Shown: positions 40,942 to 51,443, counted from the first letter of the stretch. The stretch is 64,000 nt of DNA from Anaeramoeba ignava BMAN (GCA_028826165.1 JAPDFW010000059.1:434001-498000); one strand, 5' to 3'. The notes: generated from the sequence alone by a model not told the origin. A program made the numbers and translations.

Positions 40942-43900
40942 TTAATTAAATTTTTTTGATTTTGATTTTAATTGATTCAAAGGATTCATAATATCAAAAG
41001 CACCTGAACCATTAGCACCAACACGACCAACAACAATTCTAGAAGAAGGTGTTCTAAGATCATCATAATCACCATGAAGAACCGATTCAAGAAGGAATTT
41101 AAAAGTAGTTTCGAAGCTCATTTTCTGGAATGGGGAAACTGAGGAATTCATTGTGATTCTATTAAGAGCACGGAAAGTGCCTTCATATGTCATATAATCA
41201 GCAATTAGGGACAAATGACGTGTATCAACGCTTACACTATAAACTTTGAATACTTTTTGGATTTCGAGAATAATTGATTCCCGAGCTGCCTCAACACCGT
41301 ATGTATCTAGAATCGCAGCGATATCGTTACACTCAAGATCTTCAATATCAATCATTGTACTGTAACTGTGTGCTGCGGTTAGATTCACCCCTTCTGTTTG
41401 AAGATAGAACTTGTCTTTTCCTTTGTTCTCCTTTTTTAATACATAACATCTTTGTATCCCTTTTACATTGTGAACTTCTGTTTTTTTACTCGCTTCTTCT
41501 ATCAAACTTGATATCAAAAATTTCGGTGTGTTTAATGGAACGTGAATTGCAAATTGGCATGTTTTGAGTTCTTGATCAACAAGGTTTTGTTTGATTTCGA
41601 TTGGAGTTGATTCTTTTGTATTTTGGGATTTTTCTCTTGTTTTCGTCTTTGTAAGTGTTTTATCAATATTTTCTATTTGATTTTCGTCATTTTCATCATT
41701 TTCATCATTTTCAATTTGATTTTCATTATTTTCAATATTTTCATTTTGATTTTCATTATTTTCATTATTTTCATTATTTTCATTTTCAATCCTAATTGTC
41801 TGATTTCCAGCAACATCTGTTGTATTTTGCTTCTTGTTTTTCTTTGTTAAGCTTTGTTCATCATCTGCTTCATCATAAGTTGCCTTTTCAGTTTTTTTGT
41901 CTTTACGTTGAGCCTCTGTCATATCATCTTCATTATCCAGATTAGAATTTTTATTCTGATCAGTTTCACCGAATTCAGCATCACCTTTTGAGACTGTTTT
42001 GTTAACAATAATATTACTTGAATGATATTTTGAGATTTCCTTATTGATAATCTTATTTAGCAAAGGCAGGAAGAATATGTTTATAATTGAATTAAGAGAT
42101 TCTTGAGTTTTCCCAATTTTTCGGAGACGTTTTGAGCGCAGATTAAGTTTGATATGATATACTCTCTCAGGATTTCCACTAAGAAGCTGCAAAGATTCCG
42201 AGACTTGAATTGACGAGATGACTCCTGAAAGAGAGATATTTGATAGCAAAAGTGCGAGTTGTGTAGCGTCGTCGCGAGTGAGATGATCTTTGAGAGGAAG
42301 TATCATTGTTGGTGTTGATATTTTCTTGCTTGCTGTCATGATAACTTCTCGCAAACGAGGAATTCCCAGTGTTAAATTTGTTGCTCCAAATCCAGCAAGA
42401 TGAAAAGTGTCGTAGAGATTGATTCCGTGAAGATTCGCAAATGTTCTGTTGTCTGAAACGGTAAGATCGTAAACATGTTTGTGTGTTGGCTCAACTTCTT
42501 CAATATTTACAATATCATCGAAATGTATATCATTGTGAATCAAACGCTTTAGAATTTTGTGTTCCTTTGTGCTCATCATGTTTTGATTTAATTTTAGCTC
42601 TTTTTTGAGCAAGAATCGTGAATGAGAACCTTTGAAATGTTTTGTATTTATTCCTGGAATCATATCCTGATCAAGATTTTGTTTCTGCTCGTTTTCTCGA
42701 ATTTTTTCCATTTCAAATGATTTGGATTGCAAAATTGTACCAATTTTAAATGCAAATTTTTGCGCCCAATGATTTGAAAGTTGTAATTGGTGTTGGTCTC
42801 CAATTTCTGCAACAATACCAAATCTATTTAGAAGATGAATCATTAAAGAGAAAGTCTTTTCATCACGGAAGTGTGTTTTGATGGAAACGGAATCTTTTTT
42901 TTGAGTAATTATCGATGTTGTGTTGATTGATGCATCAAGAAATCCTTTTAAAAATGAGGATTTTGATAGTAAAAACCAATTTGGAAGTGTTGGCTTGTTC
43001 AAATCCATGAAACAAAATTGCAAGAAAAGAATCAGAAACGAAGATTCAATTTGGATTTGGTTAGATCGGATATTGTTTGATGTATTATAATTGAAATTTG
43101 AAATATTTTGGATTAAATTGCCTTTCAAAAAGGAAAGATTGGTTGTTTTTGTATCAATTGAAGATAAAAGTCTTTTTCTAAATTCATCAAGAATGCTGTG
43201 GAAACTGGATGTGAAAAGATGGACAATGTGGTTTATTTGAGGAAAGTCTTTCTTGTCGATATTGATTGATATCAAGGAATGGGGATAATTTTTTGAAGAA
43301 GAACCATTGATGAAAAAAATGCCGAGAAAAAACCCGAGTTCGAAATTAAGAGGAATATTAAGTGGGATTGAAGGATCAAGATGAGGATGAGAAGATAAAG
43401 AAGAGGTATTGAAAATATTGTAGAAAAGTGATTTTTGGGAGATGTATTGAGAAAAAGACAGGGAGGAAATTTGGGCATTTTCTGGGATAGATATTCTTTT
43501 TGTAATTGGGATGTAATCTCCGAGAGAAAGAGAAGCGCCTGAAACAGGTACAATTTTGTTGTTTATTTGGCGAAGAAAAGATTTTGCTTTTGTGGCAATT
43601 ACAGAACGACCTGATCTTGTTGTAATTTTCAAGAGAGTTGATGAACCATCTTTGTTTATTGGCAGATGGCGAGTTACAGCCTCTAATGTTTTCCACTCAA
43701 TTTTACCTTTTTTACTAACTGATAAAACTGAATAATTGGATGATTTATCAATGTTGATCAAGGTTGTATCGTTTGGAAAGCGTTCGATAGATGGAGAATT
43801 TGGAGCTGTTTTGGAAATTAAAGAATCAATAAACTCGCCCATTTTTGTTGTTGTTATGAGGTTTGTTTGCTCGTTTTTGAGGATAATTTCTTCTTGCCAG

Positions 43901-46900
43901 TCCACTGAGTTTAGCGTGTTGTGAACGATGATTCCTGATGATGTTGTGAAGCTTTGAGAGGTTTTAACTGAGAAGTCATAAACATATTTGGTTTTGGGGA
44001 TGATTGGTGTGATTTCAACAATTTCATCCCATATGATTTTGCTGTTTATTGCGTTTTCGAGTGTTTTCATTTGTGAGGAGAGTTTTAGTTTGATATTTGG
44101 ATCATTTGCGATGATTTTTTGTATTAAATTGAAGTGTTTTTGGAGAAGACTTCTTGGTATTGTTTTTTTCGGAAGAGATTTGGGTTGTGGAAGAGAAGGG
44201 AAAGAATCTGATAGATGAGCATATATTTCGTGAACAAGTCCATCTATACCTGGGATTAAGTCTTGGAAAGTATTTTGGGGTTGCTGTTTGAATTGGGCAA
44301 TGCTTGGTATTTTGAGAGTATATGTTTTTTTGGATTTGGAATAATGGAATGTGGAGAATATTTGGAGTCTACTGAGAAGAAGAGCTATTGAGTAAGTTGT
44401 TGTTCTTTCAAGAATAGTGTATTTTTTGTGATTGATGCTGTTACTTCGAAGTTGTTGATAAATGGTTTGTTTTTTGGAATTGGGATTTTTTTGGGAAAGA
44501 ATCAAGAACATTGACAAAAATGATTCAATAAAAGGATCATGAGCAGAATATAGAAAATGAGGGAAAGATTGCTGTGATTGAGGGAAAAGATGATGGAAAA
44601 GAAGACAATATTCAGATTGGATATGAAGTGTTAATTTGAAAGTGGATAAAGAGGTATCTATTGAATGAGAATAAACTGAAAAAGCAGAAGAGCGAGCAAA
44701 AGAAAGAAATTCAGAAAGAAGAAGATTTGCAATATCAAGAGAAGGGATATTAGAGAAGGATATGGAAGAAGGATGAGTATCAAGATTATCGACAGATCCA
44801 GAAAAGAGATAAGCCGCACAAACAGAAGCGAAGAAAGATGAAAGATGAATTTTCGAAGGAAGAGGATGATTTAAATAGAGAAACTTTTCAGAACAAGAAT
44901 TTGAAAGAGGAAGATTGTTTGCAACAGGGAGAAAGTGTCCTGTGCGGAGATCTGAGCCGCGAATAGGAATAATATTATTGTTTGAGCGAGTGAGGAAGGA
45001 ATGAGAAGGTGTTGCACATACATGACGACCTGATTTTGTTATGATATTGATAAGAATACCGTTGGGAGGATGCCGAGAGATCTGAGAAACAGGGAGCCAA
45101 TCAACAGATTCGTTGCGGCATATTCCAGGCACAAGAAGATTAAGAGATGATGGGATGTCTAAAACAAGGGAATCAGAAGAGTTGTGAATTTTTCTCGCAA
45201 ATTTTGAGAATTGAGAAAGAAGAGAATCAATGAAATTTCCAATTGGAAGAGTGGATATTGATTTACCAAAACGTAGAATAACACCCTCATCATAAGCAAG
45301 ACTCATCTGTGTTGAGGGTTCGCCTATGGATTGTGCAGCAATGATTCCAACAGTTTCTCCTGGTTGAACAAGACTGTAGAAATATTTAAGAAACATAAGC
45401 GAACGGAATTGTGCAGCGGTTGGTTTGTCAGTTTGGTCTGGAGCTTGATTTGTGCTATATGATATTTTTTGTGGAGATGAGAGAAGATTATCAGGGTTGG
45501 ATTCAATGTATTTCTGGATTTGGTAACTGAGCTTATCGGAAATGGCTCCTAGATTGCGCGAAGGATCAAGAATAGAAATCACAGGATCTATAAAGGGAAG
45601 AAGTTTGGCAAGGCCTGTGTATGATGAGAATATATCTTGAGGGAGAAGATGAGCGAAATCTGGATGTGATTTTGCAAATTTTTCAAGAAGGGTTTTGGGG
45701 TTTTTGAATTGGGTTGTTTGTTTGACTGCGGATTTTTGTATAAGAGATATTTTTTGGTTCATATCAAAAACAGAGTCTTCATTTTGTTCGAGAATTTTGT
45801 CGACTATTGAGCGATTATCTATTTTTTCTGAGATTTCGTTTGTATGTTTTAAATTTTCATCTGAATTTTCATTTAAATTTTCATCTGAATTTTCATTTAA
45901 ATTTTCATCTGAATTTTCGTCTGTTTTTTCCAAATTTTTTGCAATTTTCGACAAACGAGAAATGGTTTGAGAAATCAAAGCAGAATTGTATTGTGTTGCT
46001 TGACGATCATAAGAAAGAGCTTCTCTTGTAGAAAGAATACGGGCAACAACCTTAGGTTGGTATTTATCAATAAGAGCACGACAATTACGGAGAACGAAAA
46101 TAAATTGGTCAAGAAATTTTGATTTCGAGACATCGATGCCATCCTCGCCATAGAGGAATTGGATAATACTTCCATCGGAATCTCTGACTGTTGAATCGTA
46201 GTGAACACGAAGACCTTCGAGATGCTTAATAAGACATCGTTGGAGATAACCACTTCGACTTGTCTTGACTGCTGTATCAACAAGACCTTCACGGCCTGCC
46301 ATTGAATGGAAGAAATATTCTGGCGGAGATATTCCTGTCAGAAAACGATTGCGCACAAATCCTCCTGCTCGTGCTGTTAAATCAAAAGGCGCAAAACAAG
46401 GCAGGCTTTTTCCACTCGTCATAAGAGGTACTCTTCTTCCCTCTAATTCTTGTTGGCCAAGTAGGCATGATATTTGAGAGAAGTTTACTACGCTTCCCTT
46501 GGCTCCGGAACTAGTCATTAATGATAGGAAATTTTGTGGGAATCTTTTCACTTGTCCGACTGGAATTGATTCTTCAATTATTTTAGTTGTGATTTTACTG
46601 AGTGCGCTTTTCATGAGGGAATCTAGTTTGCCGCCTGATTGTTCAGGATCTGCGGCTATTTTATGGCGTAATTTACTTCTAATTTGAGCGCGATGAATAG
46701 ATTTGAGGAGATTATTTTCATCTTCATCTTCATTTTCGTTTTCCAATAAATTTTCATCATTTTCATTTTCATTTTCATCTTGATTTTTATTTTTTGGATT
46801 TGGATTTGATTCTGAACGAAGTGGAGCTTCATCAACAAATTCTTGTGTCACTCTTTCTGCTTCATCATCTGCAGAAACAAAAAGTTCGCGACGAATTTTC

Positions 46901-49900
46901 TCAGCATTTTTGTTCATGAGCATATCATCCATCCCACAAGTAAAACCATGGATCTGAAGATAGTAAGTGAAAAGTCTGCCAAGAGCAGAGAGCAAAGTAT
47001 CGGCAAAGGAAGGACCATATAATTCAAAGACGGAATGAACAAGACCGAAGTTAGAAGCACCGAATTGAGCACGATCAAGAACGCCAGTAAGAAGCTCGTT
47101 CTCGACAACGATGACTGTACCCTCTTCTTTAGCAGCAGAACCTCCCCAAACAGAGACGGGAACTTTAGTATTTGAGACGATTGAGATGGGGTGTTTTCCA
47201 CAAGTGAGATGAGCAAGAAGAAACGAGATGATCTGCTTTCCAGTCCACAAAGGTTTGGGTTTAATGATAGCAGGAATTCCAAGATGGAACCTGGTTTGCT
47301 CTACACTTCGCGGATCGTTGATATCCTCGTTTGAATATGGGGAGAAGAAACTTTGTCGGACACCACGTATCTCGCTCCCATCACCGAAGGCAGAATAAAG
47401 AAGTTGCATAGCTTGTGGACGTGTAAAAAATGTATTCTTTTGAGTAAGAAGAATTCCAGTGACAATATTGTCTTGAATAAGTCCACGCAGAGGACGGCCA
47501 TCGGTACCAGATGTGTATTGCCGTTCTGCGCCAGCGATTTCATACGCCTCAGCGCGGGAGATATGATCCTGAGGGAAGTGGAGATTCATCTCATCACCGT
47601 CAAAATCAGCGTTATAAGAATTACAGTTTGCGTAGTGAAGTCTGATAGTATTCTGTCCATATAGAATTTTAGCGCGATGAGCCATTATACTGGGTTTATG
47701 TAAAGTTGGCTGTCGATTCACAAGCAAAACATCGCCAGCCAGAAGATGTCTTCCGACCTTTTTGGAAGCGAGAAGATCCGCAAAGGGATCTGGGGTTGTG
47801 TTGTTTGCAGGGTTTGAATGAGCGGGGGTGCGTCGCGGTTGTGTGAGTAATTTTTTGCTGAGCGCAACGCGTTGTGGTCTTGTCAGATATTGGAGATTGA
47901 AAATGCTTCCTCGCTCGTCAAGAAGATAGTTGGCACCGGGATAGCGATCGGGTCCGTTGACAACTGCTTGTCGCAAACGTTTGACGTTATGTTGGGTCAC
48001 TGGTTCTGGAAATGACAGTTTTTTTGCGAACCGCAACGGAACACCAATTTCGTTGGTGCGAATTAACGGATCCGGTGAAATAACAGATCTTGCTGCATAA
48101 TTAACACGCTTCCCCATCATGTTGCGACGGAAAAGACCCTCCTTCTTCTCCATCACCTGTCGTATTCCTGGAGTCGGGTGAAAGTCCCGTGAAAATGCTG
48201 CGTCGTATAGGCAGTTCACATTGTATTGAAGCATGTTCCACGCGCCGATAACCCCTCCAAACCGCCGATCAACGACTGTTGTCTCATCATCCTTCTTCTC
48301 TTGATCTTGCTCGCTCTTTTTCGGTGTCTCCATCTGTTTCGACAGCACCATGATCCGCATATTCCATTCCATCACTTTCGCAAAAAATCGTGTTTGCACA
48401 TGATCCGCAAATGTTTCTCCAAGAAAATTCGGCGGACGAAACCGAGGTGGAGTGACAGGCAATACATTCAAGAAGAACATCTCTGCAGTACTTTCTCTTT
48501 GCACACGGAAGTTATCTTGTGTCTTCTGGGAATCGATGTTTTGGGAGTTTTGGCTGAGTGATCCGAAAAGTATATCCATTGAAGTTTTTTCATTTTCCCA
48601 CAGAAGTTTTATGTGTCGCTCCACTTCTATTGTGGATAAGAATTTTGCTTTGCTCCACGGTTTTATCCCTGCTTTTTCTGTCTCACTTCCGTCTTGGTCT
48701 TGCTCCTTTCTCTTCTTTCCGCGTGCTGTGCCGAGAACGTTTCTCATTGCTCTATTGTGTTCTTTTAATTCTTTCCGTTGCCGGGGTGTCAACGGTTTCA
48801 AGAAAATTTTTGTCTGTTTATCTGCCCTGTAGTCAAATGCAACGCCTCCGCAGTTTTCGCAGCGTCTTAGTTTTCCAATTTCATCCAATAATTTTTTGAT
48901 TATTTCTCTCCTGTTCTTCTCTCCATACACAGTCTTCTCGCGCTCCCAACTGCTCTTCATTTCGCTTTGTTGTGCTTCTTTATTCTTCTTCGCGTTTCTT
49001 TCCTCTCTCTCGCTTGTCTGTTTCTTTATCACTCCCGCTTTTTCCAGTATGTTTTCTATCATCCTCTCCACAGTTTCTTCTGTTGTCTCTTTGTTTTTCT
49101 CGCTGGTTTTTTTGCTTTTTTTATTTCCCTTTTGCGTGCTTTCATCTTCCACAAGGAATTCCTTGATGTCGCTTTTTTTTGCTTGTTTTTTTTCGTTATC
49201 CGAGTCAAACAGTGCGTCTGAATCGAATTCGTCTTCATTTTCTTCCATTTCAATTTCTTGGTTCTTTTTTTTGCCCAATTTCTGTTGTTTTCGTTTTTTG
49301 GAGAGTTCTTGTCTTTCTTGTGCTTTTTGATGTTTGTGCATGTTGTAGGAGAGCTTATCCAGCATCTCCATTTCAGAGAAATATCCTTTGTCAAGAAGCA
49401 GTAATTTTGCCATTATTATTTTCAGTCTAATTGGTGATATTTTCATTCTATGGCAGAATAGGCATGTGCATTTCATTAATTTGAATAACATTTTAAATGC
49501 AAATGGGTTATATATTGGTACACATAATCGAATATGTCCGAAGTGACCTGGACATTGTGTGTGACTTTTTATTTCAATTTTTATATAAATTATTATATAA
49601 ATTATTATATAAATTATTATATAAATTATTATATAAATTATTATATTAATTATTATATAAATTATTATATTAATTATTATATAAATTATTATATTAATTA
49701 TTATATTAATTATTATATAAATTATTATATTAATTATTATATAAATTATTATATAAATTATTATATAAATTATTATATAAATTATTATATAAATTATTAT
49801 TTAAATTATTATATAAATTATTATATAAATTATTATTTAAATTATTATATAAATTATTATATAAATTATTATATAAATTATTATATAAATTATTTAATAA

Positions 49901-51443
49901 ATTATTATATAAATTATTATATAAATTATTATATAAATTATTATATTAATTATTATATAAATTATTTTATAAATTATTATATAAATTATTATATAAATTA
50001 TTATATAAATTATTATATAAATTATTATATAAATTATTATATAAATTATTATATAAATTATTATATAAATTATTATATAAATTATTATATAAATTATTAT
50101 ATAAATTATTATATAAATTATTATATAAATTATTATTATTATATAAAAATTATTATATAAATTATTATATAAATTATTATATAAATTATTATATAAATTA
50201 TTATATAAATTATTATATAAATTATTATATAAATTATTTAATAAATTATTATATAAATTATTATATAAATTATTAAATAAATTATTATATAAATTATTAT
50301 ATAAATTATTATATAAATTATTATATAAATTATTATATAAATTATTATAAATTATTATATAAATTATTATATAAATTATTATATAAATTATTATATAAAT
50401 TATTATATAAATTATTTTATAAATTATTATATAAATTATTATATAAATTATTTTATATAAATTATTATATAAATTATTATATATAAATTATTATATAAAT
50501 TATTATATAAATTATTATATAAATTATTATATAAATTATTATATAAATTATTATATAAAATTATTATATAAATTATTATATAAATTATTATATAAATTAT
50601 TATATAAAATAAATTATTATATAAATTATTTTATAAATTATTTTATAAATTATTATATAAATTATTATATAAATTATTATATAAATTATTATATAAATTA
50701 TTTAATAAAATTATTATATAAATTATTTATAAAATTATTATATAAATTATTTTATAAATTATTATATAAATTATTTTATAAATTATTATATAAATTATTT
50801 TATAAATTATTATTATAAATTATTTTTATAAATTATTTTATAAATTATTATATAAATTATTATATAAATTATTATATAAATTATTATATAAATTATTATA
50901 TAAATTATTATATAAATTATTATATAAATTATTTTATAAATTATTATATAAATTATTATATAAATTATTATATAAATTATTTTATAAATTAATATATATA
51001 AATTATTTTATAAATTATTATATAAATTATTATATAAATTATTATATAAATTATTATATAAATTATTATATAAATTATTATATAAATTATTATATAAATT
51101 ATTATATAAATTATTATATAAATTATTATAAATTATTATATAAATTATTATATAAATTATTATATTAATTTTTATATAAATTATTATAAATTTAATGGTT
51201 TGTAACAAAAAAAATATTGTAAATAATTTGTAAATACTTTAAAGAACACGTTTCACAAGTTGACATTGGATCTATTGGTCCCATTCTAGGATCATAAAGT
51301 CCTCCTCTAATTGGAATATTTAATTCATCTGTAACTCTATTTGTTGTTATTTCACAACAACTAAGCTTTAAAATTTCTTCTGATTTATAAAAACCAAAAG
51401 ATACATTTTCAATTCTTGTATTAACAAATGTTCTAAGTTCCAT
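40942..51443 (-). CDS. RPA1: RNA polymerase I largest subunit, 2 exons (51238-51443, 40942-49564); 2942-aa precursor with two inteins, about 1980 aa mature
   Basis: [72 protein letters not shown]; Pol I-type FHLAG..TLGIPRLRE and KMSFETT. Confidence 0.97.
42409..43908 (-). mobile_element. Intein 2 in RPA1 (500 aa), non-canonical, with degenerate LAGLIDADG endonuclease
   Basis: Inserted after TLN; starts SVDWQEE; block B VIATKAKSF; LGFFLGIFFING and FLKGFLDA remnants; block F HVYDLTV; ends NLYD; +1 residue is Thr of TFHLAG. Confidence 0.92.
43918..45303 (-). mobile_element. Intein 1 in RPA1 (462 aa) with degenerate LAGLIDADG endonuclease
   Basis: Inserted after GEPSTQM; starts SLAYDE; block B VCATPSHSF; block F YVYDFSV; ends IVHN; +1 residue is Thr. 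Confidence 0.95.
49565..51237 (-). repeat. 1673-bp GT-AG intron of RPA1 made almost entirely of a 12-bp repeat (ATAAATTATTAT)n
   Basis: Donor AA|GTATTT and acceptor AAAAAG|T restore CETCSLNHTQCPGHFGH. Confidence 0.92.

What the first reader, a model, noticed from the sequence alone, without database searches (positions are those of the whole stretch)
42409..45303. Twin inteins separated by a 3-residue extein in the Pol I trigger loop
Seen: the universally conserved GEPxTQMTLNTFH motif is split as QM-[462 aa]-TLN-[500 aa]-TFH, so only 9 bp (43909-43917) of host sequence separates the two elements. Established: this motif is the trigger helix/loop needed for nucleotide addition, so both inteins must splice precisely; inteins in nuclear genes are rare, though Anaeramoeba is known to be intein-rich. 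Inference: each intein is effectively the other's extein context, so splicing may be ordered or cooperative. Each insertion also destroys the other's homing site, so the pair could only spread as a unit by co-conversion. The pair could act as a post-translational switch on rRNA synthesis.
Basis: partly seen in the sequence, partly recalled or inferred. Interest (0 to 1): 0.88.

Follow-up and report, generated by a model that had tools for sequence, protein, structure and literature searches.

The report
Twin inteins splitting RPA1 trigger loop
The only RNA polymerase I largest-subunit gene of this intein-rich amoeba carries two real self-splicing protein inserts just three residues apart in its catalytic trigger loop; the inteins are already catalogued, and the same twin layout turns out to be common in giant-virus RNA polymerases, where each intein comes and goes on its own.

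Summary
The minus-strand ORF 40942-49491 is the genome's single RPA1 gene. Its GEPSTQM-TLN-TFH motif is split by a 462-aa insert (43918-45303) and a 500-aa insert (42409-43908), with 9 bp (43909-43917) between them. Both inserts pass Pfam's Intein_splicing cut-off, match solved inteins by sequence and fold, and are 24% identical paralogues of each other.

What the tools added:
- Site a (TQM/T) is the classical archaeal rPol A'' intein site.
- Site b (TLN/T) holds a separate family with Ser1, block-B T-K-A-K and a C-terminal Asp.
- The same genome has an a-intein in RPC1 and a b-intein in RPB1.
- The identical twin layout, always keeping TLN, occurs in about 100 giant-virus RPB1 protein clusters, alongside a-only and b-only forms.
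- Two viral contigs 96% identical in DNA differ only by the exact presence or absence of intein a next to an occupied site b.

So the pair is not an obligate unit. Both homing-endonuclease active sites are degenerate here, so the pair is fixed. Ordered splicing and a regulatory switch remain untested speculation.

The inteins belong to the published Anaeramoeba catalogue (PMC10710043). RNA reads could not be obtained. Other notes of this scan describe other inteins of this genome.

The parts
40942..49491 (-). RPA1 (RNA polymerase I largest subunit) reading frame from the first ATG to the stop. The exon continues upstream to about 49578, and the true 5' exon(s) lie beyond an AT-repeat intron.
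   Evidence: Searches give the ORF. The N-extein scores 817 bits to S. pombe RPA1 (7aoc) against 385 for the best RPB1. The C-extein scores 274 bits to RPA1 against 89 for RPB1. It is the only RPA1 copy in the 42.8-Mb genome. One search shows the upstream frame.
45304..45324 (-). N-extein end, G-E-P-S-T-Q-M, the first half of the trigger-loop motif.
43918..45303 (-). Intein a (462 aa). It has Ser1, block B A-T-P-S-H-S-F-L (44992-45015), block F V-Y-D-F (43966-43983), C-terminal H-N and +1 Thr. The LAGLIDADG remnants are A-A-Y-L-F-S-G (44797-44817) and a lost second motif (44485-44520).
   Evidence: Pfam PF14890, 66.5 bits. PDB sequence hits to TFIIB mini-inteins 5o9i/5o9j and PI-PkoII. The fold matches HE-associated inteins. 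It is allelic with archaeal rPol A'' inteins.
43909..43917 (-). Three-residue extein T-L-N (ACG CTA AAC). The L and N correspond to Rpb1 L1081 and N1082 of the trigger loop.
   Evidence: It is invariant in all 41 aligned twin cassettes. The numbering comes from Rpb1 H1085 being the trigger-loop His (PMC4574878), counting back along the motif.
42409..43908 (-). Intein b (500 aa). It has Ser1, block B A-T-K-A-K-S-F-L with no His (43573-43596), block F V-Y-D-L (42457-42474), C-terminal Y-D and +1 Thr. The LAGLIDADG remnants are G-I-F-F-I-N-G (43303-43323) and F-L-D-A-S-I-N-T-T-S (42913-42942).
   Evidence: Pfam PF14890, 45.5 bits. PDB hits. It is 24% identical to intein a over the full length, E 3e-26. 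It is sister to the RPB1 intein of the same genome, and both are sister to all viral b inteins. T-K-A-K and the terminal Asp are family-wide.
42391..42408 (-). C-extein start, T-F-H-L-A-G. It includes the trigger-loop His.
   Evidence: The C-extein aligns from residue 1213 of S. pombe RPA1 and 1204 of yeast A190.

Best explanation
Two separate class-1-type inteins of related but distinct site-specific families interrupt the single RPA1 gene at adjacent trigger-loop sites. Intein a sits at TQM/T and intein b at TLN/T. The gene is translated as one 2849+ aa precursor. Each intein then excises itself by its own chemistry. Intein a uses Ser1, block-B T-x-x-H, a terminal His-Asn and +1 Thr1859. Intein b uses Ser1, a block-B Lys in place of His, a terminal Asp and +1 Thr2362. 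Either order of splicing yields the canonical GEPSTQMTLNTFH trigger loop needed for nucleotide addition.

The central LAGLIDADG endonuclease domains are kept as folds but have lost their catalytic acidic residues. The pair is therefore no longer mobile and is inherited vertically. The twin state arose by independent occupation of two neighbouring sites, including transfer between RNA-polymerase paralogues. It was not imported as an obligate unit.

Shown: the anatomy, the homology, the family membership, the independence of the two sites in nature, and the decay of the endonucleases. Inferred: that both splice efficiently in vivo, and in which order.
For: Anatomy and intein identity:
- Exact anatomy.
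- Both inserts pass the Pfam Intein_splicing cut-off.
- Sequence matches to solved inteins.
- The AF2 model (pLDDT 74.6) matches TliVMA, PI-PkoII, PhoVMA and PI-PfuI inteins and I-DmoI-type LAGLIDADG folds.

Host gene:
- The host is RPA1 and is single-copy.
- TLN is invariant in all 41 aligned twins.

Conservation pattern:
- The splicing halves are 35-42% identical to viral homologues, against 19% for the middle domains.
- Block residues are conserved, and T-K-A-K plus the terminal Asp are the norm of the whole b family in essential viral RPB1 genes.
- A precedent for a block-B-His-less intein that uses Lys is Tko CDC21-1 (PMC7765530).

Other occurrences and history:
- RPC1 has intein a only and RPB1 has intein b only in the same genome.
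- RPA1-b and RPB1-b are sisters, 99 SH-aLRT.
- Site a is occupied alone in 61 archaeal A'' genes.
- Viral twin, a-only and b-only states interconvert.

Endonucleases:
- The endonuclease acidic residues are present in 40 of 40 viral a inteins and 38 of 40 viral b inteins. They are lost in RPA1-a, RPA1-b, RPC1-a and RPB1-b.
- No LAGLIDADG Pfam hit appears at E <= 0.1.
Against: - There is no direct evidence of splicing for this protein. RNA reads could not be obtained, and no proteomic data for RPA1 are reported in the main text of PMC10710043.
- Intein b lacks three textbook residues: the block-B His, the penultimate His and the terminal Asn.
- AF2 gives no confident geometry for the junction. 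Cassette residues 475-479 have pLDDT below 50 and the pTM is 0.51. Steric interference between two folded inteins three residues apart is therefore not excluded.
- The placement of the Anaeramoeba a-inteins in the trees is weak because of long branches, with support of 69-92.
Confidence: 0.8

Rival explanations
1. Coupled maturation. The two active sites are bridged by only T-L-N, so the inteins interfere sterically or cooperate. Splicing would then be obligatorily ordered, for example a first and co-translationally, then b. This two-step maturation could gate Pol I activity.
For: - Thr1859 must enter the active site of intein a, while the Asn1861 carbonyl is the scissile bond of intein b. Only one residue lies between them; this follows from the sequence.
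- AF2 is unsure at the junction.
- Intein a is fully synthesised about 500 codons before intein b, which would favour a-first. This is inference.
Against: - Both families also occur alone at their sites in archaea, in viruses, and in RPC1 and RPB1 of this genome. Neither needs the other.
- The flanking -3..-1 and +1..+3 residues are the same in single and twin contexts.
- The nucleophiles are Ser and Thr, not Cys, so the known redox-type conditional splicing is unlikely.
- No data point to regulation.
Confidence: 0.15
2. One of the two inserts, most likely intein b with its atypical residues, is a dead intein. In that case RPA1 would work with a permanent 500-aa insertion, or the gene would be non-functional.
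For: Intein b has T-K-A-K instead of T-x-x-H, Tyr instead of the penultimate His, and Asp instead of the terminal Asn.
Against: - The same three features are conserved across the whole b family in giant-virus RPB1 genes and in RPB1 of this genome, both essential genes.
- The splicing halves are conserved while the endonuclease part decays.
- A 500-aa domain inside the trigger helix, between N1082 and T1083 equivalents, is hard to reconcile with catalysis. That rests on established trigger-loop function.
- The gene is single-copy with an intact frame.
- PMC10710043 notes atypical C-terminal residues shared with Nucleocytoviricota in its 'cluster 9'.
Confidence: 0.04
3. The inserts are removed at the RNA level as introns, or the whole 965-aa block is one composite element that excises from its outer junctions only.
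For: Nothing positive. The genome does have spliceosomal introns, including one just upstream in this gene.
Against: - No GT...AG is present at either pair of boundaries.
- The inserts are in frame and free of stops.
- They are 33-35% G+C like coding DNA, whereas the upstream intron-like DNA is an AT repeat.
- Both have strong intein homology.
- Outer-junction excision would delete T-L-N, which is invariant in all twins.
Confidence: 0.01

Closest known systems
Archaeal rPol A'' inteins (Mja rPol A'', Nph rPol A'', named in PMC1635734)
   Same: - The insertion point is the same as for intein a: G-E-P-G-T-Q-M | S...T-H-N | T-M-R/N-T-F-H. This was seen in 61 complete archaeal genes, including Methanocaldococcus and Haloquadratum.
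- They share Ser1, H-N/T ends and a similar N-terminus (S-L-P/A-Y-D-E).
- The Anaeramoeba a-inteins fall near them in the trees.
   Different: - The host is archaeal subunit A'', not eukaryotic RPA1.
- None of the archaeal genes examined also has intein b.
- Many of them keep a full endonuclease.
Giant-virus (Nucleocytoviricota) RPB1 inteins at the same two sites; probably 'cluster 9' of PMC10710043 for site b
   Same: - The twin layout is identical, with T-L-N between the inteins, in 78 of 138 retrieved proteins by a strict pattern and in nearly all the rest by eye. It also occurs in GVMAG contigs of IMG/VR.
- The b family shares Ser1, T-K-A-K and the terminal Asp.
   Different: - The host is viral RPB1 without CTD heptads.
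- The viral inteins keep intact LAGLIDADG catalytic residues and are polymorphic, so they look mobile. The RPA1 pair is degenerate and fixed.
- Sequence identity is only 26-31%.
[quoted passage not shown]
   Same: Two inteins lie in one conserved domain. Experiments and phylogeny there also found no co-homing as a unit and found invasion of singly occupied alleles, which matches the viral L160/L210 pair.
   Different: The spacing here is only three residues, so each intein lies inside any plausible recognition site of the other. In addition, the endonucleases are dead in RPA1.
Back-to-back POLQ/HELQ inteins of Anaeramoeba (PMC10710043 Fig. 6 legend; scan note s1-703049)
   Same: They occur in the same genome and the same kind of event: two inteins placed next to each other in one motif.
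   Different: - That pair was reported as unrelated inteins at one point of a helicase.
- Here the two inteins are paralogues, separated by a conserved three-residue extein.
- The layout recurs across viruses.
Tko CDC21-1 intein (block B without His, Lys-assisted; PMC7765530)
   Same: Intein b also lacks the block-B His and has a conserved Lys in that block.
   Different: No evidence shows that the Lys plays the same role. Intein b also ends in Asp.

Membership tests
Intein (HINT-domain protein-splicing element) | In-frame insertion that interrupts a conserved host motif, whose removal restores the motif | tested here: met
   Removing both inserts restores G-E-P-S-T-Q-M-T-L-N-T-F-H. The exteins align to RPA1 on both sides.
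Intein (HINT-domain protein-splicing element) | Significant match to the intein splicing-domain profile and the HINT fold | tested here: met
   PF14890 scores 66.5 and 45.5 bits against a cut-off of 35.8. PDB inteins match by sequence. Foldseek finds 7qss at E 9e-20 and 2cw7 at E 8e-19.
Intein (HINT-domain protein-splicing element) | Nucleophile at position 1 and at +1 of the C-extein | tested here: met
   Intein a has Ser1397 and Thr1859. Intein b has Ser1862 and Thr2362.
Intein (HINT-domain protein-splicing element) | Block B T-x-x-H | tested here: inconclusive
   Intein a has T-P-S-H, so the feature is met. Intein b has T-K-A-K, so it is not met, but this is the conserved state of the whole b family. 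A precedent exists for Lys-assisted inteins (PMC7765530).
Intein (HINT-domain protein-splicing element) | Terminal His-Asn (block G) | tested here: inconclusive
   Intein a ends in H-N, so the feature is met. Intein b ends in Y-D, and the Asp is nearly invariant in the family. PMC10710043 mentions atypical C-terminal residues shared with Nucleocytoviricota.
Intein (HINT-domain protein-splicing element) | Demonstrated protein splicing | not testable with these tools
   There are no reads and no proteomic data for RPA1. Splicing is inferred from the gene being single-copy and essential.
Active LAGLIDADG homing endonuclease | Two LAGLIDADG motifs, each ending in a catalytic Asp or Glu | tested here: not met
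   Intein a has L-F-S-G and no D-G-D-G. Intein b has F-I-N-G and N-T-T-S. The viral consensus is L-A-D/E-G with D-G-D-G-N for a, and L-A-E-G with G-D-G for b. No Pfam LAGLIDADG hit appears at E <= 0.1.
Active LAGLIDADG homing endonuclease | LAGLIDADG alpha/beta fold between the splicing halves | tested here: met
   The AF2 secondary structure and Foldseek matches to PI-PkoII, PI-PfuI, I-DmoI and I-Tsp061I.
RPA1 (Pol I largest subunit) | Closer to RPA1 than to RPB1 or RPC1 over both exteins | tested here: met
   The N-extein scores 817 bits to RPA1 against 385 to RPB1 and 353 to RPC1. The C-extein scores 274 against 89 and 85.

The most novel reading that the evidence does not exclude
The three-residue micro-extein makes the two inteins one functional maturation module. 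The folded state of one intein would sterically gate the other, so that RNA polymerase trigger-loop assembly is a fixed two-step process. This could explain why the twin layout is so widespread and stable in giant-virus RPB1 and was retained in a nuclear Pol I gene. A weaker form of the idea is that the twin is a composite selfish element in which one endonuclease can carry both inteins into empty alleles.
Probability: 0.15. Interest if true: 0.65.

Novelty: new member of a known kind. Interest (0 to 1): 0.45.

Why it matters
For the amoeba itself this is one more entry in an already published list of about 100 inteins, so the locus alone is not news.

What may be useful is the wider picture:
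- One trigger-loop hot spot holds two site-specific intein families.
- One of these families is shared with archaea.
- The families occur singly and as a twin three residues apart in giant viruses and in the Pol I, II and III paralogues of one eukaryote.

This is the tightest natural test bed I know of for how neighbouring inteins affect each other's splicing and homing, a question opened experimentally only for sites much further apart (PMC10643990). The near-identical viral pair with and without intein a shows that invasion or loss next to an occupied site does happen.

Tried and rejected
- **Supplements of PMC10710043.** Dataset S1 and Fig. S6 are not held. I could not confirm that the three-residue spacing is shown there.
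- **Site b in archaea.** A DNA pattern for an empty site a plus an occupied site b found nothing in 446 sampled archaeal genomes. The same pattern recovers only 7 of 33 viral b-only loci, so this negative is weak.
- **Careful tree.** The IQ-TREE 'careful' search did not finish in time. The quick mixture-model tree was used, and the position of the Anaeramoeba a-inteins stays unresolved.
- **Junction geometry.** The AF2 model is not confident at the junction, so no steric conclusion was drawn.
- **Organism names.** None could be obtained for the metagenomic RPB1 proteins. Viral origin rests on gene context, GVMAG contig names and the absence of CTD repeats.
- **Species.** The species of the window was not verified.
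- **Spliced model.** I did not build or search a joined (spliced) RPA1 sequence. The exteins and inteins were searched apart, by reference.
- **Rejected readings.** Introns, a single composite intein, and a pseudogene were considered and rejected (see the rival explanations).
Full report
**1. The observation**

The finding lies on the minus strand. ORF 40942-49491 translates without a stop into 2849 aa. A script located the pieces:
- G-E-P-S-T-Q-M at aa 1390-1396 (45304-45324)
- insert 1 at aa 1397-1858 (43918-45303, 462 aa)
- T-L-N at aa 1859-1861 (43909-43917; ACG CTA AAC)
- insert 2 at aa 1862-2361 (42409-43908, 500 aa)
- T-F-H-L-A-G at aa 2362-2367 (42391-42408)

**2. The host gene**

The N-extein scores 817 bits against S. 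pombe RPA1 (7aoc), 385 against the best RPB1 and 353 against RPC1. The C-extein scores 274 bits against RPA1, aligning from RPA1 residue 1213 and yeast A190 residue 1204, and under 90 against RPB1 and RPC1. A six-frame search of the whole 42.8-Mb assembly with 800 aa of the N-extein finds only this gene plus RPC1 (contig 76) and RPB1 (contig 67). This is therefore the only Pol I largest-subunit gene.

The His of T-F-H is the trigger-loop His, Rpb1 H1085 (PMC4574878). Counting back along the motif, site a lies between the equivalents of M1079 and T1080, and site b between N1082 and T1083.

**3. Both inserts are inteins, not introns**
- Both pass Pfam's curated Intein_splicing threshold, with 66.5 and 45.5 bits against 35.8.
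- Both match solved inteins by sequence: TFIIB mini-inteins 5o9i/5o9j, PI-PkoII and the KlbA intein.
- An AlphaFold2 model of the whole cassette was built on an alignment with 40 viral twins (mean pLDDT 74.6). It shows two beta-rich splicing modules, each wrapped around an alpha/beta domain. Foldseek matches it to endonuclease-bearing inteins (TliVMA 7qss E 9e-20, PI-PkoII, PhoVMA, PI-PfuI) and to I-DmoI-type LAGLIDADG enzymes.
- The boundaries have no GT...AG.
- The inserts are 35% and 33% G+C, like the exteins at 39%.
- The intron-like DNA just upstream of the ORF is a pure AT repeat.

The rejection of the intron reading therefore rests on sequence alone.

**4. Anatomy of the two inteins**

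The two inteins are paralogues. They are 24% identical over their full length, middle domains included, with E 3e-26.

| Feature | Intein a | Intein b |
|---|---|---|
| Position 1 | Ser1 | Ser1 |
| Block B | T-P-S-H | T-K-A-K |
| Block F | V-Y-D-F | V-Y-D-L |
| C-terminus | H-N | Y-D |
| +1 residue | Thr | Thr |

An earlier scan note (s1-707784) flagged the atypical residues of intein b. I checked them against the family. In 40 viral b-inteins block B reads T-K-(A/G)-K in nearly all, and the terminal Asp is nearly invariant. RPB1 of this genome has the same features. They therefore define a working variant family and are not damage. A block-B-His-less intein that uses a Lys is known (Tko CDC21-1; PMC7765530). 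PMC10710043 says its 'cluster 9' inteins share atypical C-terminal residues with Nucleocytoviricota.

**5. Relatives in the same genome**

Six-frame searches with each intein, read in frame, show the following:
- RPC1 carries an intein at T-Q-M|T-L-K, which is site a (31% identical to RPA1-a).
- RPB1 carries one at T-L-N|T-F-H, which is site b (46% and 37% identical in its two halves, with T-K-A-K and a terminal Asp).
- More distant relatives sit in four CRM1/exportin paralogues, in MCM proteins and in Pol epsilon.

So Pol I has a and b, Pol III has a, and Pol II has b. This matches the 'differential intein insertion' in RNA polymerase subunits mentioned in PMC10710043 (SI Fig. S6, not held).

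**6. The twin is widespread outside the amoeba**

A database search restricted to the 965-aa cassette returned 183 long proteins, all RPB1-type with Intein_splicing and usually LAGLIDADG_3 domains.

Parsing them gave these results:
- 78 have the strict pattern GE-x-x-T-Q-(M/L) | S/C...V-H-N | T-L-N | S-(V/I)...D | T-F-H.
- Almost all the others show the same V-H-N-T-L-N-S junction with small motif variants.
- A few are b-only and one is a-only.

Several lines point to giant viruses:
- Their contigs are packed with short ORFan genes and carry split RPB1 genes.
- None of the 138 proteins has CTD heptads.
- The same cassette is found on IMG/VR contigs named GVMAG, meaning giant-virus MAGs.
- One hit is a UniRef 'viral metagenome' protein.

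Among the best 80 IMG/VR loci, 16 are twins, 22 are a-only, 33 are b-only and 9 could not be parsed.

**7. Site a is the old archaeal site**

In 61 complete cases the insert is a single intein of 200-545 aa: S-(L/I/V)-P-x-x-E...T-H-N | T-M-(R/N)-T-F-H. The hosts include Methanocaldococcus, many Halobacteria including Haloquadratum, Micrarchaeota, Woesearchaeota, Heimdallarchaeota, Thermoplasmatales and Archaeoglobaceae. This is the site of the long-known rPol A'' inteins (named in PMC1635734). None of these genes also has intein b.

**8. Phylogeny**

In a 122-row tree, all b-inteins form one clade (95). RPA1-b and RPB1-b are sisters (99), and together they are sister to all viral b (97). The viral a-inteins form a clade (96).

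With archaeal sequences added, RPA1-a and RPC1-a fall outside the main viral a clade (97-98) and near the archaeal a-inteins. Support is only 69-92 and the branches are long.

I therefore read the RPA1 twin as assembled from two separate histories, with b exchanged between the Pol I and Pol II paralogues. I do not read it as one imported cassette, but the a side is not settled.

**9. Is the pair an obligate unit?**

No, for four reasons:
- The single states are common (sections 5-7).
- On the intein trees, occupancy of the neighbouring site changes at least 15 times on the a tree (92 rows) and at least 24 times on the b tree (111 rows).
- Viral loci L160 (twin) and L210 (b-only) are 96% identical in DNA on both sides, and their b-inteins are 97.8% identical. 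They differ by exactly 1425 nt, which is intein a, between the ATG of T-Q-M and the ACN of T-L-N.
- Both endonucleases of L160 have intact motifs.

Intein a was therefore gained by, or precisely lost from, an allele whose site b, 9 bp away, was occupied. This agrees with the Haloferax MCM experiments, in which double inteins invade singly occupied alleles well and empty alleles poorly (PMC10643990).

**10. Mobility of the RPA1 pair**

In 40 viral twins the catalytic motifs are present: L-A-(D/E)-G and D-G-D-G-N in a (40 of 40), and L-A-E-G and G-D-G in b (38 of 40). In RPA1 they read L-F-S-G / lost in intein a, and F-I-N-G / N-T-T-S in intein b. RPC1-a and RPB1-b are equally degenerate.

Identity to the viral homologues is 35-42% in the splicing halves but 19% in the middle domains. 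The endonucleases are therefore dead, probably kept only as structural scaffolds, and the pair is fixed.

**11. How it most likely works**

One precursor is made. Each intein runs the standard four-step reaction with its own nucleophiles. The product is the same whichever intein goes first. Intein a is complete about 500 codons before intein b and needs only Thr1859 downstream, so it may often splice first. This is inference.

The flanking three residues on each side are the same in single and twin contexts, and each family functions alone elsewhere. A requirement for the partner is therefore unlikely. Steric interference is not excluded, because AF2 is unsure at the junction. I found nothing that bears on a regulatory 'switch'. 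The nucleophiles are Ser and Thr, not Cys, which argues against the known redox-controlled type.

**12. What is known and what is new**

Anaeramoeba inteins, including RPA1 as a host, were published in 2023 (PMC10710043). That paper also notes inteins 'next to each other' in POLQ. A scan note (s1-703049, not re-tested by me) describes that pair as back to back. Other notes of this scan call the genome A. ignava, which I did not verify.

The main text does not describe the three-residue spacing in RPA1, its recurrence in giant-virus RPB1, or the allelism of site a with the archaeal A'' intein. A search of the held literature for adjacent, tandem or twin inteins found only the Haloferax study. 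I rate the locus as a new member of a known kind, with moderate interest that comes from the comparative picture rather than from the amoeba gene.

**Limits**
- No reads and no proteomics were available.
- The supplements were unavailable.
- The search for site b in archaea was weak.

Noticed in passing
window 49492-50100 (- strand): The RPA1 frame stays open upstream of the first ATG. Only about 29 codons there (about 49492-49578, ...C-P-G-H-F-G-H-I-R-L...) look coding. Beyond them lies a long AT-only tandem repeat that translates as I-I-I-Y repeats. So the 5' exon(s) with the first ~70-100 aa of RPA1 must lie further upstream across an AT-repeat intron. The Pfam Rpb1_1 domain is not seen in the ORF.
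   Followed up: partly
L160:2046-3470 versus L210:4214/4215 (IMG/VR contigs 3300027736_002897 and 3300042549_009654): Two giant-virus contigs 96% identical in DNA differ by the exact presence or absence of a 1425-nt intein at site a, while both carry a 97.8%-identical intein at site b. Both endonucleases look intact, which suggests a live intein polymorphism in a virus population.
   Followed up: yes
G000:C67:263292-263525 (RPB1 gene of the same genome): A further Intein_splicing match (33.8 bits) lies about 3 kb upstream of the trigger-loop intein in RPB1. RPB1 may therefore hold a second intein at another site.
   Followed up: no
L004-L007 (G000 contigs 93, 12, 13, 72): Four CRM1/exportin-1 paralogues each carry a 530-aa intein at H-P-G-I-K-D-M | S-C-D-T-F. 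These inteins are related to the site-a family and have Ser1 and H-N/S ends.
   Followed up: partly
L009 (G000:C106:80617-84105): An MCM gene has two inteins separated by a 23-residue extein. One sits in the Walker A loop (…S-V-S-K | C…H-N | S-Q-F…) and a second follows soon after. This is another close pair in this genome.
   Followed up: no
L023, L025 (metagenomic giant-virus contigs): The viral RPB1 genes that carry the twin are themselves split. Domains Rpb1_1 and Rpb1_2 lie on a separate ORF 0.4-1.4 kb upstream of the rest, as expected for an intron or an inserted element. Some carry a third Intein_splicing hit.
   Followed up: no
window 40942-49491, several places (e.g. aa ~905-945, ~1160-1185, ~2560-2640): RPA1 holds long Asn/Glu/Asp-rich low-complexity inserts (N-E-N-E..., E-N-S-D-E-N-L-N repeats) between conserved domains. 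This is typical of a very AT-rich genome.
   Followed up: no
L031 (Heimdallarchaeota MAG WAPZ01000684.1): An Asgard archaeon carries a site-a intein with the extein T-L-K-T-F-H-Y-A-G-V-R, as in eukaryotic RPC1. In the first tree it is the nearest neighbour of the Anaeramoeba RPC1 intein (93 SH-aLRT; not stable in the second tree).
   Followed up: partly
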